Origin: Macrostomum lignano
Lineage: Eukaryota
Length of the DNA: 64,000 bases
Reading direction: 5' to 3'
NCBI GenBank assembly: GCA_002269645.1
Contig: NIVC01003413.1
Span: forward strand, 1-64,000
Below, piece after piece: positions 11,227 through 59,135 of this stretch (position 1 is its first letter; every line of letters starts with the position of its first letter). Under the pieces are notes generated by a model. That model was not told the DNA's origin. It was given only the letters and a program-made list of their open reading frames with translations, and searched no databases. The translations under genes were made by a program, and so were the position numbers.

Positions 11227-11254
11227 AATGAATCCGGAGAGTTAAGTTGTTTGA

Positions 11255-11765
11255 CGGAAAGAAATCGATTAAGTCCAGTTTAGCGGAGACGATTTCAATG
11301 TTTTAATTTTGACGGAGAGGATTTCTGTTTCGTGGAGAGGATTTCGATGGTGCTCAGTTTCACGGAGAGGATTTCGAAGGTGCTCAGTTTCACGGAGAGG
11401 ATTTCGATGATGTTCAGCTTCACAGAGAGGATTTCTGTTTCGCGGAGTTTAATTTATAATTGATTTCTGTTTTATGGAGACGATTTTGATAGATTTAAGT
11501 TTCAAGGAGAGGATTTCGAAGGTGTTAAGTTTCACGGAGAGGATTTCGAAGGTGTTCAGTTTCACGGAGAGGATTTCGATGATGTTCAGCTTCACGGAGA
11601 GGATTTCTGTTTCGCGGAGTTTAATTTATGATTGATTTCTGTTTTATGGAGACGATTTTGATAGATTTAAGTTTCAAGGAGAGGATTTCGAAGGAGTCCA
11701 GTTTCACGGAGAGGATTTCGATGGTTTTCAGTTGCACGGACAGGATTTCTGCTTCGCGGAGAGGA
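11255..11765. repeat. 30-bp/18-bp minisatellite block (longest example; one per array unit)
   Basis: Unit ggagaggatttcgatggtgttcagtttcac interleaved with ggagaggatttctgtttc. Other blocks at about 1405-1560, 3730-4075, 5885-6280, 8750-8960, 14795-15135 and 17015-17330. Confidence 0.85.
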
Positions 11766-11789
11766 TCTTGATGGATTTGGCATCTTAAA

Positions 11790-14737: not shown

Positions 14738-14771
14738 CTAACCCTAACCCTAACCCTAACCCTAACCCTAA
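14738..14771. repeat. Interstitial telomere-like tract, unit 6
   Basis: About 5 CCCTAA copies. Confidence 0.85.
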
Positions 14772-16958: not shown

Positions 16959-16988
16959 CTAACCCTAACCCTAACCCTAACTCTAACC
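16959..16988. repeat. Interstitial telomere-like tract, unit 7
   Basis: ctaaccctaaccctaaccctaactctaacc. Confidence 0.85.
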
Positions 16989-18593
16989 AATGAATCCGGA
17001 GAGTTAAGTTGTTTGACGGAAAGAAATCGATTAAGTCCAGTTTAGCGGAGACGATTTCAATGTTTTAATTTTGACGGAGAGGATTTCTGTTTCGTGGAGA
17101 GGATTTCGATGGTGTTCAGTTTTACGAAGAGAGGATTTCGATGATGTTCAGCTTCACGGAGAGGATTTCTGTTTTGCGGAGATAACTTATGATTGATTTC
17201 TGTTTTATGGAGACCATTTTGATGGATTTAAGTTTCAAGGAGAGGATTTCGAAGGAGTCCAGTTTCACTGAGATGATTTCGATGGTTTTCAGTTGCACGG
17301 ACAGGATTTCTGCTTCGCGGAGAGGATCTTGATGGATTTGGCATCTTCAATCAGTCAGAGAAGAGAGTAAAGAGAAGAATGAAAAGAGTAGAGAGATGAG
17401 ATGATAGAAAACAGAGTAGAAATGAATGGAGAGATTAGACATGACAGATGGGAGAGAAGAGGGGAGTAAGGCGGGAACGAAGGAGAGAGAAGAGAAGAGG
17501 AGAGAGGAGATGAGAGGGGAGATATGAGATAACAGAGGGAGATAAGAGAGATGATAGGAGAGAGAATAGATGAGGGATAAGAGCGTACAGAGGAAATAGA
17601 AGAGAGGGGAGAGTAGAGGAGAAAGAAAGAGTGAGATGAAGGATGAGAGATGAGAGAGGAGGGGAGAGAGAAGAGAGGAGAAAAGAGGGGAGAAAGGAGA
17701 CAGGAGAGAGTAGAGACGAAAGACCAGGGAGAAGATATAAATAAGGTAGTAGAGATGAGAGGAGAGAGAAGCGAAAGGAGAAGAGAGAGAGGAGAGAGAT
17801 GAAAGATCAGAGGAGAGAGTTAAGAGAGGAAAGTAGTGAAGAGAGGAGAGATGAGAGATGCGATGAGAAAAGAGATTAGTGATAACATAAGAGAGAAGAG
17901 ATTTGAGATTTGAGAAGAGAGGGGAGAAGATCAAAGGAGCAGGGAGAGGAGAAAAGAGAGAATGGAGAGGATAGAAAAGAGAGAAGAGAAGAGACAGGGG
18001 ATAGTGGAAATGAGGAAAGAAAGATGGGAGACAAGAAAGTAGAGTGTGAGAGCGTATATGAGATATGAGAAATGAGAGCAGAGAGGCGAGAAAAGAGAAG
18101 AGAGAGGGAGGGTTAAGAGAGACGATAGATAAGTGAGTAGAGATGAGATATGAGAGAGGAGAGAAAAGGGCAGAGATAAGAGAGAAGAGAGGAGACAGGA
18201 GACAGAAGTAAAAAGGAGAGTTATGAGAGAAGAGAGGAGACAAGAGACAGGAGAGGGTACAGACGAAAGACGAGGAGAAGATATAAATAAGGGAGTAGGG
18301 GTAGAGATGAGATGAGAGAGAGGAGAGAGAAGAGAGTCACGATAATAGCGAAGAGAGGAGAGAGGAGATATGAGAGACGTGAGAGTCTTTGATCTATGGT
18401 CTTTGAAAGGTTTTGTAAAGAATTTGTAGACGATTTAGACGATAGGGTTCAAGGCATGGAATTTCAGTTGATGGATGTTTCAGGGAATGGAATTCCGGTG
18501 ATGGGAGTTCTTCCCCTTTCTCCTCCGAAGGAGGAGTTCCACTCGTATTTCCATATTGGTTCGTCATAATTTCCACCTGTCCTGTCGGCTCAC

Positions 18594-21500
18594 CTCTTCC
18601 GAAGCGTTCTTGAGCTCTGCGTTCCCGCCGAACAGCGCCAGCATGTTGTCCTTGAAGTCCTCGGCAAAGATCGGCACGAAGCTGAGATTGCAGAAATCAG
18701 CTCGGCCCTTGCCAGCCGGGTAGTGCAGGTAGCTCGGCTCTGAGCTGTTGAGTCTCCAGCTGTTCCCGAACTCAAACAGCTGCCTCTCAGAGCTGCCAGC
18801 TGGCAGGACGCTGCCGTGTCTCAGTCTGAATCCGCTCGCATTGCTGTTGCCTAGCAACCCGTCCAGTCCGCTCGGGTATTTTCCTAACAAGTCCAGTTGA
18901 ACGCCGACTCTGAGCGAGCTAGTCTCCATGGTAACGGTGACGCTGACGCCGGTAGACTCGTCGACAATGTCGATGGTGCTGTTGTCGGGGACCTCCAGCC
19001 GGTAGCTGTCCAGTCTGGTCGCGTTGCTCAGCGCCGCCAGCTCGCCCCTGACGCTGCCGATCAGACGTCCGTCGCTGCTGAAGACGTCGAGGTCGTCGGA
19101 GCTTTCGTTGCGGATCACCGACACGGCCAGCTCGTTGAGGCCGGACTTCAGCGCGACGCCGACGAAGGCCGTGGCGGCTCCACCGCTGACTGGCGCGGTG
19201 CGCGCTTGCAGCCGCAGCATCGGTGAGTCCGGCCACCGCTCGCTGGTGAGCAGGTGGTACTCGCAGTGACCGTTGAATGTGTAGCTGCGGTTCGAGAGCG
19301 TGCTCAGATGGGGGTCGCCTCGGTTGAAGCCTGGAGATCGAGGTTGGTTGTTTGGTTTGGTGCTTAGTTGCTCAGGTTTTGGTTTTGGAGCTTATTTGCT
19401 TAGGTTTTGGTTCGATGCTTGGTTGCTTAGTTATTGGTTTACCTCCAGCAGGTGGCTGGTAGTCCTTGCTGGTGCACACGGGTCTTACGGCAGAATAAAC
19501 GGGCATCATTCCGGCCGCTGAGCAGACCCTTAAACCGTACAATTCATTTTTATACTGCTGAGATCCGAAACGAAATTGAACTCTATCAGTCGTCCTTTGC
19601 CGATAAAAGTACATTGCGTGTCCAGCACCGTCTGAGCTGCTGCTGATGAGGTGCCCAGCTGTAAATGATTATGTATTTTAACTCAATTAACTAAAACTAA
19701 ATATACGAGCGTATATTCAACTCTTCAATGCTCAGGTTCTGACTCACTGGTTGACATGCTGAACAGGATCCATTGCATGACAGTTCTCACAACCCAGAGG
19801 GGCTGACTTCTACGGCACAGCTGACTGATTTCGCTGCCAGCAGCTGCCGATGACATTTTGTAGCAGCACCTGGTCGACACCAGGTGACGGCAATTCTCAA
19901 GCTCGCATCTCAAGGAATTTTCCGGCTTACAACCGCTCGCACTGCTGCCTGTGAAGCTCCGAGCGCACTGGTAGCTGGTGTTACGGAAGCACATCCGGAT
20001 GCTGTCACCGGAGCACTCAAGCTTGTACGGACTGTACCGCCTGTCAAGGACTGCCGTGCGAAAATCGAAGGGACAGTCCGAGCAGCCTGGAAAGTCAGGG
20101 CTGCTCTTGTTGGCTCTGGCGGCTGCGATCCAACTGCCGCACTCAGGTGCACCCCTGTGCCCGATGCTGAGCTGCAGCACGTGACGCCCGGGTCTTCCCG
20201 AACTTCCGGGACTCAGGTTGGGCAGCTCGGGCCAGTCTGGGCTCAGGCTGAATGGCAGCCCTTTCCGAACGAATAAATTATCCGTGAATCCTGAGAATGC
20301 CATCAGGTTCAACGTTTGAGAGCTCCAGTTGAGGATTCTCGGCACAGGCAGGTGGAAGTCGCCGTAGTTGAAAATGGCGTATGAGTGAGTCTCGTTGCGT
20401 GTTACAACTGCTTGGAACTCGATGCTCTGAAATTGCATGCAGTAAGCAATTGTGCTCGAATGAGAAAGCATAAAAAAGCTGAAAAATGATTAAATCTAAC
20501 CTAGTGTTAGATTTCTGTGCAATTACATCGAGTAACCATAAAATCATAATAAGTTGCTTCGGGCGACCTTTTTTCTGTCTTTTATGGGATCTTCACGAAA
20601 TATATCAAATTCTAGTATGAGACGTCATAGCTTTTGCAAAGTATTAAAAAATGCATGCTAAAGAGTTGATTTTTTTCAGGAAAAATAACATTCTGGTTTT
20701 TCGTCTTCTTTTCCTTTTAAAGATACTTTAAATACAACATTGTTGTAAAAAGTGAAACTAAACTTAAAAAAACAGCTGCTTAGAGAATTTTGTTAAAAAT
20801 TACGTTATATATTTGCATCTTTGGGTCATTGCTAGCAAACAGAAGTGCAAATTATTTCCGTGGGAATGAGCTCCGTCAATTCGGAGAGATTTCCCCACTT
20901 ACAGCATTTGCCTTGGCTCGAGAACACAGGCCCAGGCAGAGGTCGAGCCAGCCGTTTTTCTCGTCCCAAGCTTGCCTAGAAGTGCAGTTCGAGACGCAGT
21001 CGAATCGGTTCCCATAAGGCAGTGACGGCGTCAGAATGCGCCAAGTCACGATGAGCGCCGTCAGAGGGTTGAACTTGGACCGAATCTCCTGCTCGATGAT
21101 CTGCTTGACCGCGCGCCAGTTCGAGCTAGAGCTATGGTTCCTCGAATTCAGCAGCTCGAAGGAAACCTTCGGAATCCAATCGCTTCCGTAGGTGGCAGGC
21201 TTAACGAACCAGTAAGGCGCAACGACGGCTCCAGGAAAGGTGACGTTGGCCGTGATGGAGTTGTATGGTAAATACCTCAGATACCCAGAGAAACTGATTG
21301 CGCCGTAGTTACTGATCTGGGTGTTGACATTTTTTTAAAATTATAAGCAGAGTTCAAAGAAAAATGAAGAAGTAGATTCTCCTTAATTTTGTCTTTCTAA
21401 GAATAGTTTTCTCCCAGCTCGTGAGCGCAACTGTCAATTCGAAGCTACAGTTCAACTATGTACGCAAAGTCATGTTGCGGAACTGGACTCACTTGAAAGG

Positions 21501-23006
21501 TCAAACTTTTCTGACTGCCAATCAGAAATGGAACGCCAAGTGGTGCGTGAATGATGTCATAGTCCGAGGTACTGGTTGCATTTACTGTCGATAGGAGCAT
21601 TTGAGCTGCAAAATGCATCCGGGATTGAGACAACTGGAGTGACTTCAGCCAAGTTATAATAACTGCAGCAGACTGTTGACACGTCAGTCAAAGTTTCATG
21701 CCCACAAACACTGACCCGAACTCAGTATGTGCTAGCCTAGCGCACATTAACTATGTGCTAGTTTATTTCTGTCTTATTGTTAAATGCTTTCTTTTTTAAC
21801 GAAAAAATATTTTTAGTGCCCACACAAATGGTTTTGCCACTATTGGAAGTTAAGATATGCATTAACCGTACCAAGCACTGACAATAAAAGTTTGACCTCT
21901 CGTTGCATCGTCAGATACAAATTCATCCGATTGGGACAGCATTCGCAGGCATCTCAGTCGAAGAGAATTTTTGTATCTGGGACATGGCCACAAGTGAATT
22001 AAATAAAAAGCTACTCAATCAAACGACATGTAGGAATAATGCATGCACTGCAGAGACTACTGACGAAATTGAGTTCGGTAGTGGATTTTCGCGCTGTTGC
22101 GAGCTGCAAGTTTTTTAATTAGCTTCTATGGCCACATAGGTGGTTAATGAGTGGCCCATCTGGTGTTTATACATGTATGATCTTTGGTACAAGCTTCAGC
22201 CATTCAGAACTTAAAAGGGACTACACCTTTTCACGTTCAATTTTGATCAAAGTCCAGTTCTAAAAAAACTAGCGGAAATTCAATTCAGACTGGGGATAAT
22301 TTTGTCTATGGCTAAACCTTGTTGCTTCGGTAGCAGAATGTTTTGAACTGGGGTTTGTTGCCCCAGTCTAAATTGAATTTCCGCAAGTTTTTTAGAACTG
22401 GACTTTGATCAAAATTGGACGTGAAAAGGTGTATTATTAAATTCAGACAGCCAATGAAATTCATGGGCTTCTAGATATATCCGGGGGAATATAAGCTGTA
22501 TATATCGGAGGGAATATCCCAATTTTTAGAAAGTCTTGGCCATAGACTCGCTTTAAGATGAGCGATCTTTTCTATTCCTTCATCCATGGTTCTACCTTGT
22601 AGTCAGTGAGTCTCTCTGTGATAAAAACCAATCCAAAAACCAAAGATGTCACATCAACTCACGATAGCAGACAGTCCCGTTGCCATAGTAACCCGGCTTG
22701 CAGATGCAATCAAATGAGCCGATCAGGTTGATGCAGTCGGCATTGGCATCGCACTTGGAGCTGCTGAGACACTCGTCAACGTCTTTATAATTTAGTTCAG
22801 TTTATGGCCAATAAAATACAGGCATAAATGTAGCTACAAGTATTCGCATTTTTAACAAGTGACCGAAATCAGAGGCTTTCACTTACCGGTGCAATTATCA
22901 GTTCCGTTGCCTTGAAACCCATCAAAGCAGGTGCAGTTGTACGACCCCGGCGTGTCGGTGCAAGTTGCGTAGAGACCGCAGGGCTTCGAATCGCATTTCT
23001 TCACGT
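18594..23006 (-). CDS. Module E (incomplete in window: ends after the VWD exon), 7 exons, 2,399 nt
   Basis: Exons: 22887-23006; 22663-22782; 21493-21605; 20903-21316; 19748-20426; 19443-19658; 18594-19330. The donor GTGAGC is intact at 18588-18593, and intron homology stops at about 18548. Confidence 0.8.
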
Positions 23007-26000
23007 CTGTAATGGTAGCAGCAGACACGCGTACGGAAATTATAACAAAATAAAGGAAAACAAGTAATCTATAGAATCTACAAAAAATTCCATCAGACCC
23101 ACACGAACACATATATTTTTTAATGTATATGGAAATGCTGTATGCTAGAATGTCTATAGATGCGATATCTACTGGTGTGGTAAATATATTTTCAGCTGCT
23201 GCCTTGACAGGCCCCGCCTTGAGGCAGATTTCAGCTAAGAGCTGTAAATTATATGTATGCTGTGTGTTATCCATAACATGGTGTCAGAGATGCAGTTAGA
23301 ACAGAACATGGTTCGTGTCAGACTGCTGCTGTTAGCAAATTTTACACGTAGTTGCACGGAGACAACAGCGAGGTGATGTTTGATTCGACTGGATTGCGAC
23401 CTCCAGGTCCCATGGTTTTCGACGACCTTTCACTCACTTTCATACAGTGAGAGCACATGGGCATACCATACTGAAGAGTGCTAAGACCTATCGTGAATGT
23501 GATTCAAGAAAGAGTGTTACATTCGAAGAGAAGCTGCATATCAATACTCATTTGGGTTCGCACATCCCTAGTAATGACATGCGACAGCCCTATATGACGC
23601 TCAGACGATTCATGGTCGTGTTGTTAAGCGTTAAACCGTGTTTTTGTTGTTGTTATCTGCTGCCTGAGCTGTGAGTACAACTGCATTCTCAAACTGTTGA
23701 GTATTTTACTATATGGAAAGGGGATGTTGCATGTATATGAATATGCTTTATGGAGAAGATACAGACGTAGCATAGAGTTGAGGGTGTAGTTCGGTCCTAG
23801 GAGTTTACGAAAAATACACTCTGCAAATCCAAATATACTAAATATTTGCTAAATTTCTCTTAAATTCCTGTGTTTGTGGCGATAAAATTACAACCAACAA
23901 ATTTATGCATAAAAAAGATAGGGGGATTTCTGAGGTGTAAGTACTTACCAACCGATAATCAGCTAAAGACAAAAATAATTTAGAATATAAATATTGGGGG
24001 TGTGAGAGTGAAGATCCCAACATTCTTCACCATATACCAGTTTTATCAAGGACAAAATCACTGCTCCATTCATTACTTCCTTCGTTTTATGTAGGGTAGG
24101 CCAAGTCAGAGCACAGGGTTTTACCTTCTGCCCCACACGGAACCTACGGAGAAGCAATGGTATGCAAATCGATCAATTGGCAAGAACAAATTGTCTGTCG
24201 CTGACATGTGCTCTGAAGTTGGAGTCCGCGCATTGGAGTCCGCATGTACAAACGGACCTCGGACATTCAAATCGGCAACTCATCGGCTTTTCTGGACTCC
24301 AAACTGCTACGCAATGTGAAAAAAAGACTCAGCAGACGAGTACGGTAGGCGTTAACTAAATTTTAACTTCCATAGCTGCTTTTTCATTATTAACAATTCA
24401 TTTTAGGTACGCCACATCGTGACTCCCTTATATTGTGACTGGAAAAAACTAAAGTGTTGTTGACTATGCATTGCCCTCGAATTCGTGTTTCTTCTTCATG
24501 CGTTTTTGGCTTTGAAAGTTTGTATCCTTTAAAAGAACATCGTGGGGATTTAACCTAGGATGCCTATGCGATGTCTATCGTAAATATACCTTTTCAAGCC
24601 CGAATGTGACAAAAGAAATCGAATGGCTATCTATCTGACCCAGACGAAAAAAGCATGCCGTACACAAGAATCTTAGAGACTGACCAATGAAGGCTCGTAA
24701 ACAGCTACAGAATTTTGCGACTTAAGAACTTACGGTTAAGCCGTTAAGACTAAGCGAATATAGCGGTGCCACATTTCGCTTACTTTACCACTTTTGGTTT
24801 TTGTATTTTGAAAGTACCACCTTCATGGAAGAAAGAATAGAATGGAGTGCTAATCTGAGCCAGTTATTTTTATCTCGTTCAATTTTCGCTTCTAACATCC
24901 CCTTCCCCCCGTTCTTTCCTATTGGCTCGTGACTGCCATAGACAAAGTATTTTTCGTCTCGTTTTTGTTTTCGTTCCCCTCTAAAAGGTATTTCCCAGCA
25001 TCGTACGAGCTCACAGCAAAATATGCTTTCAGCCAATAGGAAGGAACGGGGAAGGGATGTTAAAAGCGAAAATCGAGCGAGACAAAAATAACTGGCTCAG
25101 ATTAGCACTCCATTTTATTCCTCCCTCGATGACCACCTTACACAACTATTTTTAGATCTCTAAGCTCATATCCAAGCCATAGAAAAATTTGAAATTTGAA
25201 TTTGAAATTACTTTCGTCAAATTCGCGCCTGAAAAATATATACTGATAGCTAACGCCTTAAAGAGCCCCGAATTGTGAAAGAGATAAGCCAAGAGCTGCT
25301 AAATCTTTAACCCTGAGTAATAACTATAACGCAAACAAACATGAGACACTTAAGACACACACACACATCAGACCTACTAATAAGAATAATACGAGCTAAT
25401 AACTGATTACACCTGTCCAATGGGCAGATGTGCAACCGACAGCTCAGCCGCAGCTATTGCGCGACGCATCTGAAGGCTGCGCACGGCTGTTCAGTCCAAT
25501 GACTGGGGGGTCGCCACACCCACCCTCAATCACCCCAGCTAATTCTGGCACCCATTTTACAGCTAAGTGAACTGTAGCAATCCAGAGTTAAGCGTCTTGC
25601 TTAAGGACACAAATTGTTGCAGTGGGATCAGGAATCGAACATCCGACCTTCAAGTCGTGAATCCGACGCTCTAACCACTAGGCTACAACCCCTTTTGGCT
25701 ACAACCGCTTTTAGTAGGTGAGACCTACAAAAAACAAGTACACAAATGAGATCTAAGAGAACCCACATACAACCGAAAATAACACACGCATCAGACCCAC
25801 AAAAACACATACATAGGACACACAAGAACACAAATCAAACCCACAAGAAAACGAATCAGGCACACAAGAACACGAGAAAAATATATGAAAAATACTTTCA
25901 GGCTGCTGAACCTCACACAATTAAATACTTTACAGAACAGCTGCTCACCTTGCGGCTCCTGGCAGTCAGATGTCAGACAGGTTTTCACTGCCTGCTCGCA

Positions 26001-29000
26001 TTGGGGCCCTGTGAATCCCAGATCGCACTTGCACTCTTCACGGTGATAGTAAGCTGCAATTGTGACGGGTGAAGGGGTGAGTGAAAGAGTCAGTTAGTCA
26101 GTCAGTCAGTCAGTCAGTCAGTCAGTCGGTCAGTCATCCACTCACTCAAGTCAGTCAGTCAGTCAGTCAGTCACACTCACTCAAGTCAGTCAGTCAGTCA
26201 GTCAGTCAGTCAGTCAGTCAGTCAGTCACACTCACTCAAGTCAGTCAGTCAGCTACTCACCCGTGTCGTCAGCCATGCCGCAGTCAGGGCAGCAGCGGCC
26301 CCTGCTCCCGCAGTTGCACACCACAATCCTGGGAGTCCACACCGTGACGGCTCCGACCTCGTCCACCACCGCCAGCTGCAGTTTGATGTCGCCTCGCCAG
26401 TTGTCAACGGGCTGCCACACGAGCTGCCAGCTGCCGCTGGCTCCAGCCTCCAGCTTCGCGGTCCCCCCGACGGCCTCCAGCACGGTGACATTCGGTGAGG
26501 CGCCGTCGGGATCCGTCACGGAGAAGGTGACACTGACACTGTTGTTGCCGTTCACTCGCAGCTGGGCCGGGGCGCTCACGAACTGTGGTGGTCGGTTGGC
26601 CAGGACGACCCGGGTTCGAGTCTCGTCTCGAATAGCGACGGCCGCGTCTTGAGCGGCTGCGACCGAGCGAAGCTGAGCGGCGTCGAACATGCAGGTGAGG
26701 TAGGAGGAGCCGCGGCACACCTGCCATGGGAGAAGGCAGCCAGAGGGTCAGTACACAAATATAGCCTGTAATGCAACTTGTCAACTTCTAAATGAAGGAA
26801 TAAAATTTGTAACTCTTCCCTAATATTTTCATATTGGCTCGTCATAAATTCCACCTGTCCTTTCTACTCACCTCTTCCGAAGCGTTCTTGAGCTCCGCGT
26901 TCCCGCCGAACAGCGCCAGCATGTTGTCTTTAAAGTCCTCGGCAAAGGCCGGCACGAAGCTGAGATTGCAGAAGTCAGCTCGGCCCTTGCCAGCCGGGTA
27001 GTGCAGGTAGCTCGGCTCTGAGCTGTTGAGTCTCCAGCTGTTCCCGAACTCAAACAGCCGCCTCTCGGAGCTGCCAGCTGGCAAGACGCTGCCGTTTCTC
27101 AGTCTGAATCCGCTCGCATTGCTGTTGCCTAGCAACCCGTCCAGTCCGCTCGGGTATTTTCCTAACAAGTCCAGTTGAACGCCGACTCTGAGCGAGCTCG
27201 TCTCCATGGTAACGGTGACGCTGACGCCGGTAGACTCGTCGACAATGTCGATGGTGCTGTTGTCGGGGACCTCCAGCCGGTAGCTGTCCAGTCTGGTCGC
27301 GTTGCTCAGCGCCGCCAGCTCGCCCCTGACGCTGCCGATCCGACGTCCGTCGCTGCTGAAGACGTCGAGGTCGTCGGAGCTTTCGTTGCGGATCACCGAC
27401 ACGGCCAGCTCGTTGAGGCCGGACTTCAGCGCGACGCCGACGAAGGCCGTGGCGGCTCCACCGCTGACTGGCGCGGTGCGCGCTTGCAGCCGCAGCGTCG
27501 GTGAGTTCGGCCACCGCTCGCTGGTGAGCAGGTGGTACTCGCAGTGACCGTTGAATGTGTAGCTGCGGTTCGAGAGCGTGCTCAGGTGGGGGTCGCCTCG
27601 GTTGAAGCCTGGACATCGGAGGTGAATAAATAAATTAAGTACTCAAAATATGTGTGCTCAGAGCTAAAGTTACAGCAAATCAGTTACCTCCAACAGGTGG
27701 CTGGTAGTTCTTGCTGGTGCACACGGGTCTTACGGCAGAATAAGCGGCCATCATTCCGGCCGCTGAGCAGACTCTTAGGCCGTACAACTCATTTTGATAC
27801 TGGTGAGAGCCGAAGCCAAATCGAAAACTATCAGTCGTCCAATGCCGATAAAAGTACATTGCGTGTCTGGCGCCGTCTGAGCTGCTGCTAATGAGGTGAC
27901 CAGCTACAAATGATTATGTTTTTTTTAATTCAGTGGACTAACTCTTAATATTTATTGTACCATCAGCTTTGAGTTATTCAAACTTTTACGGTCAAGTTCT
28001 GACTCACTGGATGGCATGCTGAACATGATCCGTCGCAAGGCAGCTCTCACTTTCCAGAGGTCATCACTTCTACGGCACAGCTGACTGATTTCGCTGCCAG
28101 CTGCTGCCGATGACATTCTGTAGCAGCATGTGGTCGAAACCAGTTGGCTGCACCGTCGGAGCTGGCAGGCCCAAGAATTATAAGGTCTACATCTGCTCCC
28201 CATGTACCTGGACCTTTGTGCGCACTGGTAGCTGGTGTTGCGGAAACACATCCGGGTGCTGTCACCTGAGCACTCAAACTCGTACGGACTGTACCGCTTG
28301 TCAAGGACTGCCGTGCGAAGATCGAAGGGACAGTCGGAGCAGCCTGGAAATATAGAGCGGCTCTGGTTGGCTCTGGCGGCTGCGATCCAACTGCCGCACT
28401 CAGATAAAACCCTTTTCCCGATGCTCAGCACGTGGCGTCCGGGTCTTCCCGAACTTCCGGGACTCAGGTTGGGCAGCTCGGGCCAGTCTGGGCGCAGGCT
28501 GAATGGCAGCTCTTTCCGAACGAAAAAATTATCCGTAAATCCCGAGAATGCCATCAGGTTCAACTTTTGAGAGCTCCAGTTGAGGATTCTCGGCACAGGC
28601 AGGTGGAAGTCGCCGTAGTTGAAAATGGCGTATGAGTGAGTCTCGTTGCGCGTTACAACTGCTTGGAACTCGATGCTCTGAAATTGCATGCAGTAAGCAA
28701 TTGTGCTCGATTGAGAAAGAGCTGAAAAGCTTGATTTGCGGTCAGCTCTTCAAAGACGAAAAAAGTTTAAATTCGTTACTTGTTGCTTCGTTTTGACTGC
28801 TTTGCACGATAGCTTTCGTTTTAATTGCCAAATACTGCCCATTATGAGCGTTTAAGTTTGGGCTTCTAAGCAAGCAGTGTAAATTCGTGATGTTTTTTTT
28901 GGACTGCCTTGCGTGATAGTTTTATTAATGACCAAAGCATACCAATTTTTAGCACTTCCGGTGTTAGGCGTTACAAACTCTGCGTGCTTGCAGTCTCTGG

Positions 29001-47000: not shown

Positions 47001-50000
47001 GGAATTTAGTCTTGTACATGTTGAATTCCTGGCTTTGTCCCCCACCATAAAATCTATGGCGACGCCCCTGGGCTCATCCTGACTTCCACCCGTCATGGCT
47101 ACTCACCTCTTCCGAAGCGTTCTTGAGCTCCGCGTTCCCGCCGAAAAGCGCCAGCATGTTGTCTTTAAAGTCCTCGGCAAAGGCCGGCACGAAGCTGAGA
47201 TTGCAGAAGTCAGCTCGGCCCTTGCCAGCCGGGTAGTGCAGGTAGCTCGGCTCTGAGCTGTTGAGTCTCCAGCTGTTCCCGAACTCAAACAGCTGCCTCT
47301 CGGAGCTGCCAGCTTGCAGGACGCTGCCGTTTCTCAGTCTGAATCCGCTCGCGTTGCTGTTGCCTAGCAACCCGTTCAGTCCGCTCGGGTATTTTCCTGC
47401 CAAGTCCAGTTGAACGCCGATTCTAAGCGAGCTCGTCTCCATGGTAACGGTGACGCTGACGCCGACAGACTCGTCGAAAATCTCGATGCTGCTGTTGTCA
47501 GGGACTTCCAGCCGGTAGCTGTCCAGTCTGGTCGCGTTGCTCAGCGCCGCCAGCTCACCCCTGACGCTACCGATCCGACGTCCGTCGCTGCTGAAGACGT
47601 CGAGGTCGTCGGAGCTTTCGTTGCGGATCACCGACACGGCCAGATCGTTGAGGCCGGACTTCAGCGCGACGCCGACGAAGGCCGTGGCGGCTCCACCGCT
47701 GACTGGCGCGGTGCGCGCTTGCAGCCGCAGCGTCGGTGAGTTCGGCCACTGCTCGCTGGTGAGCAGGTGGTACTCGCAGTGACCGTTGAATGTGTAGCTG
47801 CGGTTCGAGAGCGTGCTCAGGTGAGGGTCGCCTCGGATGAAGCCTGGAGATCGGAGGTTGATTGTTTGGTTTAATTGCTTAGTTGCTCAGGTTTTGGTTT
47901 GATGCTTAGTTGCTCAGGTTTTGGTTTGATGCTTAGTTGCTCAGGATTTTGGTTTGATGCTTAGTTGCTCAGGTTTTGGTTTGATGCTTAGTTGCTCAGG
48001 TTTTGGTTTGATTCTGTAAGTGACCTAAAGCAGTTGAGCGGCCGGTAGCTGCCAAAAGTGAATAATTTTTCAAAATACTTAAAATATCGCAGTCAGAGCT
48101 ACAATTAAAGCGAAGCAGTTACCTCTAGCTGGTTGCTGGTAGTTCTTGCTGGTGCACATGGGTCTGACGGCATAATAAGCGGCCATCATTCCGGCCGCTG
48201 AGCAGACTCTTAGGCCGTACAACTCATTTTGATACTGCGGAGATCCGAAGCCAAATTGAAAACTATCAGTCCTGCTATGCCGATAGAAGTACATTGCGTG
48301 TCCTGCTTTGTCTGAGCTGGTGCTGATGAGTTGGCCAGCTGTAAATGATTGTGTTTTGCAAATCAATGAATTAAAACTTATTTATATCTTATTATCTGGT
48401 TCAGTTTATTCAACTCCTCAATCCTCAAGTTCTGACTCACTGGATGGCATGCTGAACATGATCCGTCGCATGACAGCTCTCACATTCCAGAGGGCATCAC
48501 TTCTACGGCACAGCTGACTGATTTCGCTGCCAGCAACTGCCGATGACATTCTGTAGCAGCATGTAATCCAAACCAGTCGGCTGCACATTTGGAGCCGGCA
48601 GGTCCAAGAAGAATGAGGCCGACAGCCACTGAACGCGCTGCAATGGCACGTTTGTGAGCACTGGTAGTTGGTTTTGCGGAAGCACATCCTGATGCTGTCA
48701 CCGGAGCACTCAAACTCGTACGGACTGTACCGCTTGTCAAGGACTGCCGTGCGAAGATCGAAGGGACAGTCGGAGCAGCCTGGAAAGACAGAGCTGCTTT
48801 GGTTGGCTCTCGCGGCTGCGATCCAACTGCCGCACTCAGATAAAACCCTCTTCCCGATGCTCAGCACGTGTCGTCCGGGTCTTCCCGAACTTCCAGGACT
48901 CAGGTTGGGCAGCTCGGGCCAGTCGGGGCGCAGGCTGAATGGCAGCTCTTTCCGAACGAATAAATTATCCATGAATCCTGAGAATGCCATCAGGTTCAAC
49001 GTTGGATGGCTCCAGTTGAGGATTCTCGGCACAGGCAGGTGGAAGTCGCCGTAGTTGAAAATGGCGTATGAGTGAGTCTCGTTGCGCGTTACAACTGCTT
49101 GGAACTCGATGCTCTGAAATTGCATGCAGTAAGCAATTGTGCTCGATTGAGAAAGAGCTGAAAAGCTTGATTTGCGGTCAGCTCTCCAAAGACGAAAAAA
49201 GTTTAAATCTGTTACTTGTTGCTTCGTTTAGACTGCTTTGCACGATAGCTTTCGTTTTAATTGCCAAAGACTGCCAATTCTGATCATTCAAGTTTGTGCC
49301 GTTAAGCAAGCAGTGTATATTCGTGATGTTTCTTTGTTCGCACTGCCTTGCGTGACAGTTTTATTAATTACCAAAACATGCTAATTCTTAGCACTCCCAT
49401 GCATAAGCAGAGCTTTACGAAAGAAATGCAGGCGTGACACGCTTCGCTTTAAGTTTTCCATGAAATAACTATTGAAGCCCTACAAGAAGCTAAATTTCTG
49501 AAATCTTATTAGTGACAGGAAATTCTAAAGGTGTACAGCTGTGCAAGAATATTTTGCGTCCATTGATACCAGTTTAGTAGTTGCGCTGCAAGAATCCTAG
49601 CAGATGCGCTACAAACTCTTAATGCCGTTTCAGCCTAAGCTACTAACTACGATATTTGGGGGGCCGTAGCCGAGCGGTAGCGCAGCTGCTCTGGTGTACC
49701 AGCGACCCAGGCTCGATTCCAAGTGCAGTCACATTAATTTGGGGCTGAATTGGAATCTCGGCTTGGCTCTGCTCGTGCAATTAACGGCCTTGAGAGACAA
49801 CCCCCAAGGCGCAGTGAAGTTTACATGCCTAACGATAGAATAAAGTTAGGGCCGCTGTACACTCCTGTGTGAGTGTGTGCCTGCGTACGTATCCGCGCGT
49901 TTTTATGCCTGCTCAAGGAAGTCGGCGGAATGGGCAGTAATGCCTCTCGCCGGTTGTGTGCCTATGTCGCTTAAAGTGCACCAGGGTGCACACAACCCCC

Positions 50001-52646
50001 TGCCTCTAATAAAAAAGAACTAAGATATTTTCTTGGTCATTGCCAGCAAACGGAAGTGCAAATTATTTCCGTGGGAATGAGCTCTGTCACTTCGGAGAGA
50101 TTTCCCCACTCACAGCATTTGCCTTGTCTCGAGAACACAGGCCCAGGCAGAGGTCGAGCCAGCCGTTTTTCTCGTCCCAAGCTTGCCTAGAAGTGCAGTT
50201 CGAGACGCAGTCGAATCGGTTCCCATAAGGCAGTGACGGCGTCAGAATGCGCCAAGTCACGATGAGCGCCGTCAGAGGGTTGAACTTGGACCGAATCTCC
50301 TGCTCTATGATCTGCTTGACCGCGCGCCAGTTCGAGCTAGAGCTATGGTTCCTCGAATTCAGCAGCTCGAAGGAAACCTTCGGAGTCCAATATCTCCGGT
50401 AGTAGTTGGTGGCAGGCTTAACGAACCAGTAAGGCGCCACGACGGCTCCAGTAAAGTTGATCTTCGCCGAGGTGGAGTTGTATGGTAAATGCCTCAGGCG
50501 ATAACCAGAGAAACTGATTGCTCCGTATTGGCTAACCTAGGGTGTTAAGATTTTTTTATTTAAAGCACACAGAAAAAGTTAAAGGACAATTAAAAAGTTG
50601 ATTTGAGCGAAATCTCCATCAGCTCAGTAGAAATAACTGTCAATTCGAAGTTACAGTTCAACTTTGTACGCAAAGCCAGATGTTGCAGAGCAGGACTCAC
50701 TCGAAAAGACAAACTTTCCTGACTGCCAATCAGAAAAGGAGCACCACGTGGTGCGGAAATGGAGCGTCTGTCGCCGTACCAGATACGGGTGTACGAACTC
50801 ATTCGGTAGTACCGGATACGGGTTGCATTTACTGTCGATAGGATCATGTGAGCTGAAAAATGCATCCGGGATTGAGAAAACTCGAGTGACTTTAGCCAAA
50901 TATAAATACAAATATATCACGTCAACTCACGATAACAGACAGTCCCGTTGCCATAGTAACCCGGCTTGCAAATGCAATCAAATGAACCGATCAGGTTGAT
51001 GCAGTCGGCATGAGCATCGCATTTGGAGCTGCTGAGACACTCGTCAACGTCTTTAATTGGGTTCAGTTTATGGCCGTTCAAATACAAGCTCAAGTTTAGT
51101 TATAAGTAGCCGCATTTATTTAAAAGTTAGTAAAATAGAAGGTAGAGTAGCTCGCTTAATAAATAGGAATAAAATGAATGAGAGAACAAACATTAACTCG
51201 TTTTTTTACTTTAATTCAATTGCCAATGCATTTCGACCCTCGTAGGTCATCGTCAGGGCAGTAGTGAAATTGAAAATTCTAATAAACAGTTGAATAAATA
51301 TACCTGTGATAAGTTGAATACACAATATAAATTATTGTACGTAGTTTTCAATCGAAACAAGTTAACACACGGTGCAGTAGCGTACACTCAAAGCTAAAAC
51401 ACGCTGAGTATGTCCCAGTATGTCTGCAACTTGAAGTCTCGTGTCCCTCGGCCTCTCAATGCAGGTGTCGTTTATAAATTTCATTGCTCTGGCGACCAGA
51501 GTATTTCGTACATCGGAAAAACTAAGCCACACTTGTACACTAGGGTCAAGGAGCACTGGACCAAAAGATCTGCTGTACAGGAGCATCTTCTCACATGCAA
51601 CTCATGCTGTAACAACAAACCGATTGATTTATTTAAGATTATCGATTCTTGCCGCCATGAGCACACTTTGAATATCTTAGAGGCTATGTACATCAAAGAT
51701 CAGAACCCGAGCCTAAACTGCCAGCTAGCTATGGGGGGGTGCCAGCCGCCAACTCAGCGTGTTTTAGCTTGGAGTGTACGCTACTGCACCGTGTGTTAAC
51801 TTGTTTCGATTGAAAACTACGTAATAATTTATATTGTGTATTCAACTTATCACAGGTATATTTATTCAACTGTTTATTAGAATTTTCAATTTCACTACTG
51901 CCCTGACGATAACCTACAAGGGTCGAAATGCATTGGCAATTGAATAAAAGTAAAAAAACGAGTTAATGTTTGTTCTCTAATTAAAGTCGAAGGTTTTCAC
52001 TTACCGGTGCAATTATCTGTTCCGTTGCCTTGAAACCCATCGATGCAGGTGCAGTTGTACGACCCCGGCGTGTCGGTGCAGGTAGCGTACAGACCGCAAG
52101 GCTTCGAATCGCATTTGCTCACGTCTGCAATGGTAGGTCGTTACAGCAGATACGGATAACGAAATAAAGGAAAACGGGTGATCAATGGAATCAACAAAAC
52201 ATCACATCAACCTCACACTAGCACACACATCAGATCCACAACAAAACACATACACATCGGAAAAACAAGAATACACACATAAGACCCGCAAGCTCAAAAC
52301 ACAGATTAAAATGCAACCACCAGAAACAATAACACGAGAGGAAAGTTTACGGCAATAAATTTCAGATTGTGTGAATCTACTGCAATCCGGTAATCTACTG
52401 CGCAACTGCTCACCTTGCGGCTCCTGGCAGTCAGATATCAGACAGACATTCACTGACTGCTCGCATTGGGGTCCTGTAAATCCCAGATCGCACTTGCACT
52501 CTTCACGGTGATAGTAAGCTGCAATGGTGACGAGTGGGTGCGTGAGTGAGTGAGTGAGTGAGTGAGTGAGTGAGTGAGTGAGTAAGTGAGTGAGTGAGTG
52601 AGTCAGTCAGTCAGTCAGTCAGTCACCCACTCACTCCAGTCAGTCA

Positions 52647-52689
<43 letters not shown>

Positions 52690-52691
52690 TA

Positions 52692-52730
<39 letters not shown>

Positions 52731-52980
52731 CCCACTCACTCAAATCAGTCAGTCAGTCAGTCAGTCAGTCAGTCAGTCAGTCAGTCATCCACTCACTCAA
52801 ATCAGTCAGTCAGTCACCCACTCACTCAAGTCAGTCAGTCAGTCAGTCAGTCAGTCAGTCAGTCAGTCACCAACTCACTCAAGTCAGTCAGTCAGTCAGT
52901 CAGTCAGTCAGTCAGTCAGTCAGTCACCAACTCACTCAAGTCAGTCAGTCAGTCACCCACTCACTCCAGTCAGTCAGTCA

Positions 52981-53023
<43 letters not shown>

Positions 53024-53025
53024 TA

Positions 53026-53068
<43 letters not shown>

Positions 53069-53520
53069 CCCACTCACTCAAATCAGTCAGTCAGTCAGTC
53101 AGTCAGTCAGTCAGTCAGTCAGTCATCCACTCACTCAAATCAGTCAGTCAGTCACCCACTCACTCAAGTCAGTCAGTCAGTCAGTCAGTCAGTCAGTCAG
53201 TCAGTCAGTCACCCACTCACTCAAATCAGTCAGTCAGTCACCCACTCACACAAATCAGTCAGTCAGTCACCCACTCACTCAAGTCAGTCAGTCAGTCAGT
53301 CAGTCAGTCAGTCAGTCAGTCAGTCAGTCAGTCAGTCAGTCAGTCAGTCAGTCAGTCAGTCAGTCAGTCAGTCAGTCAGTCAGTCAGTCAGTCAGTCACC
53401 CACTCACTCAAATCAGTCAGTCAGTCACCCACTCACTCAAGTCAGTCAGTCAGTCAGTCAGTCAGTCAGTCAGTCAGTCAGTCAGTCAGTCAGTCAGTCA
53501 GTCAGTCAGTCAGTCAGTCA

Positions 53521-53554
<34 letters not shown>

Positions 53555-56500
53555 AAGTCAGTCAGTCAGTCACCCACTCACTCAAATCAGTCAGTCAGTC
53601 AGTCAGTCAGTCAGTCAGTCAGTCAGTCAGTCAGTCAGTCACCCACTCACTCAAATCAGTCAGTCAGTCAGTCAGTCAGTCAGTCAGTCAGTCAGTCAGT
53701 CACCCACTCACTCAAATCAGTCAGTCAGTCAGTCACCCACTCACTCCAGTCAGTCAGTCAGTCAGTCAGTCAGTCAGTCAGTCAGTCAGTCAGTCAGTCA
53801 GTCAGTCAGTCAGTCAGTCACCCACTCACTCAAGTCAGTCAGTCAGTCAGTCAGTCAGTCAGTCAGTCAGCTACTCACCCGTGTCGTCAGCCATGCCGCA
53901 GTCAGGGCAGCAGCGGCCCCTGCTCCCGCAGTCGCACACCACAATCCTGGGAGTCCACACCGTGACGGCTCCGACCTCGTCCACCGCCGCCAGCTGCAGT
54001 TTGATGTCGCCTCGCCAGTTGTCGACGGGCTGCCACACGAGCTGCCAGCTGCCGCTGGCTCCAGCCTCCAGCTTCGCGGTCCCCCCGACGGCCTCCAGCA
54101 CGGTGACATTCGGTGAGGCACCGTCGGGATCCGTCACGGAGAAGGTGACACTGACACTGTTGTTGCCGCTCACTCGCAGCTGGCTCGGGGCGCTCACGAA
54201 CTGCGGTGGTCGGTTGGCCAGGACGACACGGGTTCGAGTCTCGTCTCGAATGGCGACGGCCGCGTCTTGAGCGGCTGCGACCGAGCGAAGCTGAGCGGCG
54301 TCGAACATGCAGGTGAGGTCGGAGGAGCCGGAGCTGCGGCACACCTGCCAGGGCGGAGCGGCAGCGGCATGGGTTTCCATGCGCAAAATGTTTTTCTCGA
54401 AATGCATAGTAGGTCTTTACTGGCAATTTTCTCACCAAGAATCCGGTAGTGACGTTAGCAACAACTTTTTAATTTTTTCGAGCTCGTACATTAAATAACT
54501 GATTACACCTGTTCTGATAAGCAGATGTGCAACCGACAGCTGCGCCGCAGCTATCGGGGGGAGCATCTGAAAGCTGCGTACGGCTGTTCAGTCAAAGTAC
54601 TGCGGGCTCACCAAACTCACCCTATACTATCGCAGCTAATGCTGATTGTCATTTTAGAGCAGGTTTAACTGAAGAAATGTAGAGTTAAGTGTCTTGTTCG
54701 AGGACACTAATGGTTCCAGTGAGATCGGGAATCCAACGGTCAACCTTCATGTCGAGAGCTACAACCCCTTATAGATTAATGAGTGGATCCAGGGTGGCCA
54801 ACCATTTTTTGATCAGGGGTACATCAGAAATTTATACCACAACGAGCGAGGTATCAGCGCAATTTTACCACCACAGGTCAACATTTTCATTTCGCTTGAA
54901 AATAGGATCATGACCGTATCTCAGGAAATTTTTCTCTTAAGTGTCCGATGACCCAATAAATTCACACCAGGACTCATGCATCGTAAAAATTTCTGCTTTT
55001 TCCCGAATACTGTAGTTCCACATTAGCACTTCTTAACTTCAACCTGCCTGTCCGCTCACCTCTTCCGAAGCGTTCTTGAGCTCCGCGTTCCCGCCGAACA
55101 GCGCCAGCATGTTGTCCTTGAAGTCCTCAGCAAAGGTCGGCACGAAGCTGAGATTGCAGAAATCAGCTCGGCCCTTGCCAGCCGGGTAGTGCAGATAGCT
55201 CGGCTCTGAGCTCTTGATTCTCCAGCTGTTCCCGAACTCAAACAGCTGCTTCTCGGAGCTGCCAGCTTTTAGGGCGCCACCGTATCCCAGTCTGAATCGG
55301 TATGCGTACCTGTTGCCTAGCAACCCGTCCAGTCCGCTCGCGCATTTTCCTGTCAAGTCCAGTTGAACGCCGACTCTGAGCGAGCTCGTCTCCATGGTAA
55401 CGGTAACGCTGACGCCGGCAGATTCGTCGACAATGTCGATAGTGCTGTTGTCAGGGACCTCCAGCCGGTAGCTGTCCAGTCTGGTCGCGTTGCTCAGCGC
55501 CGCCAGCTCGCCCCTGACGCTGCCGATCCGACGTCCGTCGCTGCTGAAGACGTCGAGGTCGTCGGAGCTTTCGTTGCGGATCACCGACACGGCCAGCTCG
55601 TTGAGGCCGGACTTCAGCGCGACGCCGACGAAGGCCGTGGCGCCTCCACCGCTGACTGGCGCGGTGCGCGCTTGCAGCTGCACCCTCGGTAAGCGCCAGC
55701 AAAATATGTTGTAGAGCAGGTGGTACTCGCAATGACCGTTGAATGTGTAGCTGCGGTTCGAGAGCGTGCTCAGGTGAGGGTCGCCTCGGATGAAGCCTGG
55801 ATATCGGACGTTGGTGTTTGGTTTGATGCTTATAAGTGACCTAAAGTATTTGAGCTTTAATTACTTTATGAAATACTCAAAATATGGGTGCTTAGAGCTA
55901 CAGTTACAGCAAATCAGTTACCTCCAACAGGTGGCTGGTAGTTCTTGCTGGTGCACACGGGTCTTACGGCAGAATAAGCGGCCATCATTCCGGCCGCTGA
56001 GCAGACTCTTAGGCCGTACAACTCATTTTGATACTGCTGAGACCGGAGGCCAAATCGAACTCGATCAGTCGTCATTTGCCGATAAAAGTAAATTGCGTGT
56101 CCGGCGCCGTCTGAGCTGCTGCTGATGAGGTGACCAGCTACAAATGATTGTTTTTTTTAATTCAGTGGACTAACACTTGGTAAATATTTTACCGTATTTT
56201 ACATTTTACATTTATATTTAAATACATTTTACCATGTTATTCAAACTTTCACGGTCAAGTTGTGACTCACTGGATGACATGTTGAACATGATCTGTCGCA
56301 TGGCAGCTCTCACTTTCCAGACGGCATCACTTCTACGGCACAGCTGACTGATTTCGCTGCCAGCAGCTGCCAACGACATTCTGTAGCAGCAACTGGTCGA
56401 CACCAGCTGACTGCACTTTTGAAGCCGGCAGGCCAAGGAATAAGAAGGTCTACATCTGCTGTACCTGAACCTTTGTGCGCACAGGTAGCTGGTGTTGCGA

Positions 56501-59086: not shown

Positions 59087-59135
59087 CTTGCGGCTCCTGA
59101 CAGTCAGTTGTCAGAAAGACTTTCACTGACTGCTC
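59087..59135 (-). pseudogene. Truncated 3' half of the module-terminal EGF exon (edge of the module array)
   Basis: EQSVKVFLTTDCQEPQ plus intact GTGAGC donor. The 5' half (YYHREECKCDLGFTGPQC) is missing, one Cys is changed to Phe, and an in-frame TGA lies just upstream. Confidence 0.75.

What the first reader, a model, noticed from the sequence alone, without database searches (positions are those of the whole stretch)
19856..56490. Hypervariable, disulfide-stapled loop in the AMOP-like domain; extra cysteines arrive only in pairs
Seen: between CFR and CCY the framework Cys are fixed, but the loop after the first Cys differs completely. A: AQRFRYSR (8 aa). B: SQTCHCSAFSG (11, +2 Cys). C: AERKYRLCWYYSTTLRGCAWYS (22, +2 Cys). 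D: AQRSRYMGSR (10). E: ARSFTGSSASG (11). The flanking NIDO-b sequence is almost identical among modules. Approximate positions: 56379-56490, 48549-48675, 36316-36480, 28117-28235, 19856-19980. Inference: a conserved scaffold displaying diversified knob-like binding surfaces, as expected for recognition molecules (pathogen, allo-, gamete or substrate recognition).
Basis: partly seen in the sequence, partly recalled or inferred. Interest (0 to 1): 0.75.

Follow-up and report, generated by a model that had tools for sequence, protein, structure and literature searches.

The report
Module-specific cysteine loop in flatworm gene
Five tandem copies of a mucin-4-like extracellular module in the flatworm Macrostomum lignano copy sequence from one another and stay nearly identical, except for a cysteine-framed patch of about 35-50 codons that is old and specific to each module rather than fast-evolving.

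Summary
The peptides are real. They lie on the minus strand within about 10 nt of the stated coordinates, in intact GT-AG exons of Macrostomum lignano. Five tandem modules (EGF-EGF-NIDO-Cys-rich domain-VWD-Ig-like-EGF, about 1000 aa each) join in frame. The loop between framework Cys6 and Cys7 is 8, 11, 22, 10 and 11 aa long. It sits in the most divergent patch of the module.

Three parts of the claim weaken:
- "Differs completely" is overstated. The A and D loops differ by one base and a 6-nt indel.
- dN/dS is not above 1 (about 0.4-0.5). Synonymous divergence is raised as much as non-synonymous divergence.
- The patch is not intrinsically fast. Module E and a single-module paralogue at another locus have nearly identical patches (pS 0.05) while the remaining sequence of those two exons differs more (pS 0.17).

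A breakpoint test shows that E is a mosaic (p <= 0.001). Its flanks resemble its array neighbours and its Cys-rich segment resembles the outside paralogue. The best reading is concerted evolution by gene conversion, with a module-specific patch that escapes homogenisation.

The "AMOP" label rests on position only. The Pfam model, a profile search of 1.84 billion proteins and Foldseek all fail to link the domain to AMOP. Disulfide pairing could not be tested. Extra Cys come as a pair in both loops that have them, but modules A, C and D carry one unpaired extra Cys in NIDO.

The parts
52414..58732 (-). Module A. Nine exons: EGF1 58732-58613, EGF2 58510-58391, NIDO0 58312-58194, NIDOa 57927-57505, NIDOb+Cys-rich 56934-56271, second X-domain exon 56137-55922, VWD 55796-55060, Ig-like 54344-53879, EGF3 52518-52414.
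   Evidence: tblastn with M. lignano proteins plus GT-AG splice sites; open frame of 990 codons
41015..52124 (-). Module B. Exons: 52124-52005, 51050-50931, 50852-50701, 50536-50114, 49113-48441, 48338-48123, 47843-47107, 43432-42967, 41119-41015. The long introns hold transposon fragments and a 1.8-kb (AGTC)n run.
33524..38699 (-). Module C. Exons: 38699-38580, 38477-38358, 38279-38134, 37964-37542, 36928-36208, 36128-35913, 35536-34800, 34361-33896, 33628-33524.
25949..33171 (-). Module D. Exons: 33171-33052, 32949-32830, 32751-32606, 32436-32014, 28677-28008, 27903-27688, 27608-26872, 26720-26261, 26053-25949.
18594..23006 (-). Module E, incomplete in the window. Exons: EGF1 23006-22887, EGF2 22782-22663, NIDO0 21605-21493, NIDOa 21316-20903, NIDOb+Cys-rich 20426-19748, second X-domain exon 19658-19443, VWD 19330-18594. 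No Ig-like, EGF3 or tail exon follows.
   Evidence: homology to the single-module locus L001 ends at 18541
56386..56481 (-). Patch of module A (Cys6 to the CC pair). Loop AQRFRYSR at 56478-56455.
48556..48660 (-). Patch of module B. Loop SQTCHCSAFSG at 48657-48625. The two extra Cys codons (TGC) are each one base away from TTC and GGC of the E-type loop.
36323..36460 (-). Patch of module C. Loop AERKYRLCWYYSTTLRGCAWYS at 36457-36392. It reads as an A-like start plus a 42-nt insert that carries two TGT Cys codons. No donor copy of the insert exists elsewhere in the window.
28123..28224 (-). Patch of module D. Loop AQRSRYMGSR at 28221-28192, which is the A loop with one substitution and a 6-nt insertion.
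19863..19967 (-). Patch of module E. Loop ARSFTGSSASG at 19964-19932. The same type occurs in the single-module genes (L001 module F and Mlig002447, both AQSFTGSSASG).
59087..59135 (-). Relic 3' half of an EGF3-type exon (..VKVFLTTDCQEPQ) with its donor site, upstream of module A and preceded by a stop codon. It marks the upstream edge of the tandem array.

Best explanation
The window holds a tandem array of at least five paralogous modules of about 1000 codons from a Macrostomum lignano extracellular protein. Each module reads EGF, cbEGF, NIDO, a lineage-specific 14-Cys domain at the position AMOP occupies in MUC4, VWD with a GDPH motif, an Ig-like domain and EGF. The modules splice in frame, probably into one giant protein. 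They evolve in concert: gene conversion between neighbours keeps most of each module nearly identical, synonymous sites included. A segment in the Cys-rich domain escapes this homogenisation. It is centred on the loop between framework Cys6 and Cys7 plus the next 23 codons, and it keeps an old identity specific to each module. The patch is therefore deeply diverged and conserved within each type, not fast-evolving. Steps shown here: the gene structure, the mosaic ancestry, raised dS as well as dN in the patch, and conservation of the E-type patch across loci. Steps inferred: that the patch is a surface-exposed element determining specificity, that selection (rather than sequence divergence alone) keeps conversion out of it, and that the extra cysteines pair with each other.
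For: Gene structure: five complete sets of GT-AG exons have open frames, and each EGF3 exon joins the next EGF1 exon in phase 1-1. No signal-peptide or tail exon lies between modules, whereas the single-module paralogues have both (P0007; L001 4296-4403 and 12764-12910).

Raised divergence of both kinds: patch pS is 0.46-0.64 and pN 0.22-0.47, against flank pS 0.09-0.15. At codons whose amino acid never changes, 5 of 10 in the patch vary synonymously, against 58 of 441 elsewhere (Fisher p = 0.007). A-B patch pS is 0.52, while the adjacent intron differs by only 0.099.

Not a mutation hot spot: for E versus F, the patch has pS 0.047 and pN 0.050, while the remaining sequence of the two X-domain exons (NIDOb+Cys-rich and the second X exon) has pS 0.169 and pN 0.090. 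E, F and P0007 share 31-34 of 34 patch residues at 62-79% identity elsewhere in the region compared.

Mosaic ancestry: in sliding windows E is nearest to A-D in the NIDO-b part and in the second X exon and VWD, but nearest to F across alignment columns of about 300-660. In the best segment, 20 of 24 informative sites group E with F, against 5 of 54 outside it (maximum chi-square 41.9, permutation p <= 0.001). The closest module pair changes from segment to segment. The variable stretches occur as discrete types that are shuffled among paralogues.
Against: There is no transcript evidence that the five modules form one mRNA. dS estimates in the patch rest on only about 15-20 synonymous sites per pair, and the loop alignment is uncertain. 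The pair A versus P0002 shows a loop changing quickly (5 of 10 identical) while the rest of the region compared is 95% identical, so some loop types may turn over fast. The E mosaic could equally have arisen from an ectopic conversion of E by an F-like donor. Selection against homogenisation is inferred and not shown. Indels and divergence alone can block conversion.
Confidence: 0.6

Rival explanations
1. Diversifying (positive) selection. The loop would be a recognition surface driven to change amino acids, with cysteines added in pairs to staple new knobs.
For: The loop is the peak of amino-acid divergence. A versus its close paralogue P0002 shares 5 of 10 loop residues against 95% identity elsewhere in the region compared. 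The B-D patch has pN/pS of about 1.1. Both loops that have extra Cys have an even number of them.
Against: Pooled dN/dS is about 0.5 in the loop and 0.37 in the post-loop patch, no higher than in the flanks (0.4-1.2). Synonymous divergence is raised in parallel. The E-type patch is the best-conserved part of the domain in three paralogues. The two Cys of B arose by separate point changes, which implies an intermediate with an odd number of Cys.
Confidence: 0.2
2. A functionally indifferent surface loop. Under this reading the patch drifts under relaxed constraint, subject only to keeping the scaffold cysteines. It escapes gene conversion because indels and mismatches abort heteroduplex formation. 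The differences between modules would then have no functional meaning.
For: Patch DNA divergence (0.17-0.42) is similar to that of the short introns (0.19-0.33). Omega in the patch is about the same as in the flanks. Loop length ranges from 6 to 22 aa.
Against: The E-type loop and patch are under clear purifying selection across E, F and Mlig002447. The framework Cys and the length of the post-loop segment are strictly kept.
Confidence: 0.15
3. A local mutational hot spot or an assembly artefact produces the apparent variability.
For: Both dS and dN are raised in the patch. The M. lignano genome is repeat-rich and hard to assemble.
Against: E versus F shows lower divergence in the patch than outside it. 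All indels are multiples of three, all frames are open and all splice sites are canonical. Loops A and E are identical in independent gene models.
Confidence: 0.04

Closest known systems
MUC4 beta-subunit, SUSD2 and Drosophila Mesh (NIDO-AMOP-VWD extracellular proteins)
   Same: The order is NIDO, then a Cys-rich domain, then VWD with a GDPH motif, followed by EGF-like domains and a hydrophobic C-terminus in the single-module paralogues. The literature on this architecture is listed.
   Different: The middle domain does not match the AMOP model. It has 14 framework Cys rather than 8 and has homologues only in Macrostomum-like sequences. Five whole units are repeated in tandem and in frame, where the known proteins have one. 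No mucin repeat was seen.
AMOP domain of isthmin-1 (PDB 9C6T; PMC12000326)
   Same: The X domain, like the AMOP of MUC4 and SUSD2, ends just after its last Cys, at a Tyr.
   Different: No sequence match appeared in the PDB search, even at E <= 10. The two AF2 models gave no Foldseek match to 9C6T. The Cys count differs. Homology remains unproven.
Multigene families under concerted evolution with a specificity patch that escapes gene conversion (for example MHC peptide-binding exons and plant R-gene LRRs). This comparison rests on my general knowledge.
   Same: The flanks are homogenised and the specificity segment is deeply diverged. The nearest neighbour is discordant along the sequence.
   Different: Here the units are modules inside what is probably one gene. 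No polymorphism data and no ligand are known, and dN/dS above 1 is not seen.
Conotoxin-type hypervariable loops between cysteines. This comparison rests on my general knowledge.
   Same: Cys codons are fixed while the residues between them diverge, and synonymous change is raised as well.
   Different: The patch is conserved between paralogous loci, so there is no sign of sustained accelerated evolution.

Membership tests
AMOP domain (Pfam PF03782) | Significant match to the family HMM | tested here: not met
   No PF03782 hit at E <= 0.1 or E <= 10 for single exons, the 212-aa X domain, P0003, P0005, P0007, P0008 or P0010.
AMOP domain (Pfam PF03782) | Detectable sequence relatives among AMOP-containing proteins | tested here: not met
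   A profile of four X domains searched against 1.84 billion representative proteins gave five hits. P0007 and P0006 are M. lignano proteins, P0008 is a Logan transcript contig of unknown organism, P0010 is an unidentified JGI metagenome fragment, and P0009 is a spurious internally repetitive protein. None has an AMOP annotation. A PDB sequence search with the profile did not find 9C6T at E <= 10.
AMOP domain (Pfam PF03782) | Half beta-barrel core with thumb helices, as in PDB 9C6T | tested here: inconclusive
   The AF2 models have mean pLDDT 45 and 54. Foldseek against the PDB gave no hit with E <= 0.001 and 9C6T was absent from the rows shown. The models are too weak to exclude the fold.
AMOP domain (Pfam PF03782) | Eight conserved Cys forming C1-C8, C3-C6, C4-C9 and C5-C7 (PMC12000326) | not testable with these tools
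   The X domain has 14 framework Cys. Their pairing cannot be derived because the tool returns no model coordinates and no disulfide mapping is available.
AMOP domain (Pfam PF03782) | Position between NIDO and VWD, as in MUC4 and Mesh | tested here: met
   NIDO (E 1e-8 to 6e-12) lies upstream and VWD (E 2e-7 to 7e-14) downstream of the 205-aa domain.
MUC4/SUSD2/Mesh-type proteins | NIDO domain | tested here: met
   PF06119 scores above its gathering threshold in P0003, P0007 and P0008. In the window it is split over exons NIDO0, NIDOa and NIDOb.
MUC4/SUSD2/Mesh-type proteins | VWD domain with a GDPH autocleavage motif | tested here: met
   PF00094 hits. 'RGDPHLSTL' is present in all five modules. 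Cleavage itself was not tested.
MUC4/SUSD2/Mesh-type proteins | One NIDO-AMOP-VWD unit per protein plus a membrane anchor | tested here: not met
   Five units join in frame and no anchor exon lies in the window. The single-module paralogues P0007 and L001 do have a signal peptide and a hydrophobic tail.
Loops under diversifying selection | dN/dS above 1 in the variable segment | tested here: not met
   Loop dN/dS is 0.50 and the post-loop patch 0.37, by Nei-Gojobori counts pooled over 10 pairs. Per pair the pN/pS ratio is 0.4-1.1. Power is low with five sequences.
Concerted evolution / gene-conversion mosaic | Nearest neighbour changes along the sequence, with significant breakpoints | tested here: met
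   Sliding windows. Maximum chi-square 41.9 with permutation p <= 0.001. Segment-wise distance matrices.

The most novel reading that the evidence does not exclude
The five modules could be alternative or combinatorial cassettes. Every module starts and ends in phase 1, so any subset can be spliced in frame, and single-module paralogues show that one module suffices. The locus could then yield a small repertoire of surface proteins that differ mainly in the patch, kept distinct by selection. That would make it a recognition system (self/non-self, gamete or microbe) built on a lineage-specific Cys-rich domain.
Probability: 0.1. Interest if true: 0.7.

Novelty: new variant of a known kind. Interest (0 to 1): 0.4.

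Why it matters
The locus is a clean case for studying how gene conversion and selection divide up a repeat. Within a single exon the DNA switches from about 97% to about 60% identity and back, and an outside paralogue shows which part is original. It also flags a Cys-rich domain, so far seen only in Macrostomum-like sequences, at the place where AMOP sits in MUC4-type proteins. If that domain is a very divergent AMOP, it would extend the 'stable core, variable epitopes' picture drawn from the isthmin-1 structure to variation inside a single protein. For annotation, the current M. lignano gene models for this locus are fragments and chimeras (P0001, P0016) of what is probably one giant multi-module gene.

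Tried and rejected
- Pfam scans of exons and full paralogues for AMOP gave no hit. A first attempt with raw DNA references failed because of stop codons.
It was repeated with substrings of returned proteins.
- Sequence search of the PDB found only EGF and VWD relatives and one chance hit.
- Two AF2 runs (X domain of module E; X domain of P0008) were low-confidence. Both Foldseek searches against the PDB gave no match with E <= 0.001. Surface exposure and Cys pairing therefore remain untested.
- A search for more paralogous DNA found L001. No encoding contig is on record for P0002 or P0004.
- No signal-peptide or tail exon was found in the window.
- No donor for the 42-nt insert of C exists in the window.
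- The odd VWD stretch in module A was checked for a frameshift and is clustered substitutions instead.
- A literature search for the locus tags Mlig002447 and Mlig014470 gave no paper, and a search for Macrostomum lignano with NIDO gave nothing relevant. The isthmin paper has no supplement held as text, so no AMOP alignment was available.
- A junction-spanning protein search found only a chimeric computational model, P0016.
Full report
WHAT THE SEQUENCE IS. The window is nuclear DNA of the free-living flatworm Macrostomum lignano. A query built from the exons named in the finding hit only M. lignano proteins at 89-98% identity: UniProt A0A1I8J499, J4A5, J495 and G9N2, and NCBI BOX15_Mlig014470g1. 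The gene lies on the minus strand. tblastn with those proteins, followed by inspection of splice sites, gave five tandem units:
- A, 58732-52414
- B, 52124-41015
- C, 38699-33524
- D, 33171-25949
- E, 23006-18594

Each of units A-D has nine exons, all GT-AG and all open: EGF, calcium-binding EGF, NIDO in three exons, a Cys-rich domain, VWD, an Ig/cadherin-like domain and EGF. The third NIDO exon runs on into the Cys-rich domain, and that domain is completed by a further 216-nt exon. Unit E has only the first seven exons in the window. Pfam confirms EGF, EGF_CA, NIDO and VWD.

The last exon of each unit ends in phase 1 and the first exon of the next unit begins in phase 1, so the units join in frame (..CQEPQ|DVSKC..). 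No signal-peptide or tail exon lies between them. Single-module paralogues do carry both. Mlig002447 (P0007, 1069 aa) has a signal peptide and a hydrophobic C-terminus. Locus L001 on contig NIVC01002355.1 has a signal-peptide exon at 4296-4403 and a tail exon at 12764-12910. The array is therefore most simply read as internal module duplications of such a gene, probably giving one giant protein. No transcript evidence for this was available. The existing models are fragments or chimeras (P0001, P0016).

CHECK OF THE OBSERVATION. The domain has 14 framework cysteines, invariant in all modules and in paralogues down to 33% identity. The loop between Cys6 and Cys7 is 8, 11, 22, 10 and 11 aa long in A to E, and 6-11 aa in the other paralogues. 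It lies in the most divergent part of the roughly 1000-codon module.

Three points need correction:
- The loops are not wholly unrelated. D equals A with one substitution and a 6-nt insertion. C starts like A and carries a 42-nt insert. B shares its length and its S..SG end with E, and its two Cys codons (TGC) are each one base away from TTC and GGC of E.
- Other stretches also vary: the indel-rich NIDO0 exon, a stretch just before the Cys-rich part, the second exon of the domain, and two patches in the VWD of module A.
- Extra cysteines come in twos in the loops of B and C and in the VWD of A. However, A, C and D have one extra Cys in NIDO0, so their totals are odd. The parity rule is local and rests on very few cases.

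IS THE LOOP UNDER DIVERSIFYING SELECTION? Nei-Gojobori counts pooled over the ten module pairs give:
- aligned loop positions: pN 0.47, pS 0.64, dN/dS about 0.5 (the alignment there is doubtful)
- ungapped 23 codons after the loop: pN 0.22, pS 0.46, dN/dS 0.37
- flanks: pN 0.04-0.10, pS 0.09-0.15, dN/dS 0.4-1.2

The patch is therefore 3-5 times more diverged at both kinds of site, with no shift in their ratio. At codons whose amino acid never varies, half of those in the patch differ synonymously, against 13% elsewhere (Fisher p = 0.007). Five sequences give little power for this test.

WHY IS THE PATCH SO DIVERGED? Two results point to history rather than rate.

First, module E and module F (the single-module gene in L001) have almost the same patch (pS 0.047, pN 0.050), while the remaining sequence of the same two exons differs more (pS 0.169, pN 0.090). 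At the protein level E, F and Mlig002447 share 31-34 of 34 patch residues at 62-79% identity elsewhere in the region compared. The patch is therefore not a mutation hot spot, and in this type it is the best-conserved part of the domain.

Second, E is a mosaic. In sliding windows it is closest to its array neighbours in the NIDO-b part and in the second X exon and VWD. Across roughly 360 nt of the Cys-rich part it is closest to F. In the best segment 20 of 24 informative sites group E with F, against 5 of 54 outside it (maximum chi-square 41.9, permutation p <= 0.001). The closest pair of modules also changes from segment to segment. The A-B patch has pS 0.52, while the neighbouring intron differs by only 0.099. 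The variable stretches come in a few discrete types that are shuffled among paralogues.

This is the signature of concerted evolution by gene conversion, with one segment that is not homogenised. Whether selection keeps conversion out because the patch sets a module-specific property, or whether indels and mismatches simply block it, is inferred rather than shown. Strong conservation of the E type argues that the patch matters functionally. The pair A versus P0002 (loop 5 of 10 identical, rest 95%) shows that some loop types can still change quickly.

IS THE DOMAIN AN AMOP DOMAIN? This holds by position only.
- The Pfam AMOP model gives no hit, even at permissive thresholds.
- A profile of the domain searched with full HMMER against 1.84 billion representative proteins found five hits: two M. 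lignano proteins, one transcript contig of unknown organism, one small unidentified metagenome fragment and one spurious repetitive protein. None is annotated with AMOP.
- The PDB now holds an AMOP structure (isthmin-1, 9C6T). The paper describes a half beta-barrel locked by four conserved disulfides, with strongly variable surface loops.
- The profile did not match 9C6T by sequence.
- Two AlphaFold2 models (mean pLDDT 45 and 54) gave no Foldseek match with E <= 0.001.

The models are too weak to exclude a very divergent AMOP. They also cannot say whether the loop is exposed or how the cysteines pair, and the tool returns no coordinates. Indirect signs of exposure are the tolerance of 6-22 residues and an N-glycosylation sequon directly before the loop in four of five modules. 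In B the two extra Cys are in a C-H-C arrangement, which is an unlikely staple within the loop. In C they are nine residues apart, which could close a hairpin. Both statements are inference.

VERDICT. The 'hypervariable recognition knob' reading is only partly supported. The best-supported account is a tandem multi-module MUC4-like gene under concerted evolution, with an old, module-specific, cysteine-framed patch that escapes homogenisation. This is a new variant of known kinds (NIDO-x-VWD proteins; gene-conversion mosaics). It is of moderate interest, chiefly because of the lineage-specific domain, the unusual five-fold module repeat and the very sharp mosaic boundaries.

Noticed in passing
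window 1-18540: On the minus strand this is almost pure C+T low-complexity sequence. It shows about 11-kb self-similarity (4094-4882 resembles 15163-15945) and embedded 30- to 172-bp tandem repeats (3798-4066, 5954-6231, 8799-8966, 11312-11778, 14863-15131). Homology of module E to the single-module locus stops abruptly at 18541, so the Ig-like, EGF3 and tail exons of E are missing from the window. The cause could be an insertion, a very long intron or an assembly join.
   Followed up: partly
window 26088-26252, 33667-33887, 41142-42958, 52545-53870: (AGTC)n microsatellites of 40 to about 450 copies sit in the intron right after the Ig-like exon of every complete module. They are conserved in position but differ greatly in length.
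   Followed up: no
window 35558-35803 and 47865-48012: A 27-bp tandem repeat (TTTGGTTTGATGCTTAGTTGCTCAGGT, 5-9 copies) lies in the intron before the VWD exon of modules C and B.
   Followed up: no
window 38814-40204 (+), 44894-45959 (+), 59664-61085 (+): ORFs that look like transposable-element fragments lie in the long introns of module B. One carries an aspartic-protease-like 'LLDTGAQ' motif and another an RNase H-like 'YTDGS' motif. Three consecutive ORFs of unknown nature lie upstream of the array.
   Followed up: no
window 59087-59135 (-): A relic 3' half of an EGF3-type exon, with an intact donor site and preceded by a stop codon, marks the upstream breakpoint of the tandem duplication. 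No signal-peptide exon was found between it and position 64000.
   Followed up: partly
window about 55700-55660 and about 55330-55250 (-), VWD exon of module A: Two patches of clustered substitutions, not frameshifts, read 'LLYNIFCWRLPRV' and 'GKCASGL..NRYAYRFRLGYGGALK'. Each adds one cysteine. The A-like paralogue P0002 has its own versions of both. This is a second example of patchy divergence with an even gain of Cys.
   Followed up: partly
NIDO0 exons: 58312-58194, 50852-50701, 38279-38134, 32751-32606, 21605-21493 (-): Exon length varies from 113 to 152 nt because of a Tyr/Arg-rich, indel-prone stretch (RIRYYRMSSYTRIWY..), with pN up to 0.33. Modules A, C and D carry a single extra Cys here (SLSCR), which gives those modules an odd number of cysteines.
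   Followed up: partly
L002 (Logan SRR30276804 contig) and P0015 (M. lignano A0A1I8H9S7): A second, Trp/Tyr-rich subfamily has the same NIDO-X-VWD architecture, with C-terminal cbEGF repeats and a transmembrane segment. It is 33-37% identical to the window modules and its loops are VQYFPPRYD and VQNFANPPA. The source organism of the Logan contig was not identified.
   Followed up: partly
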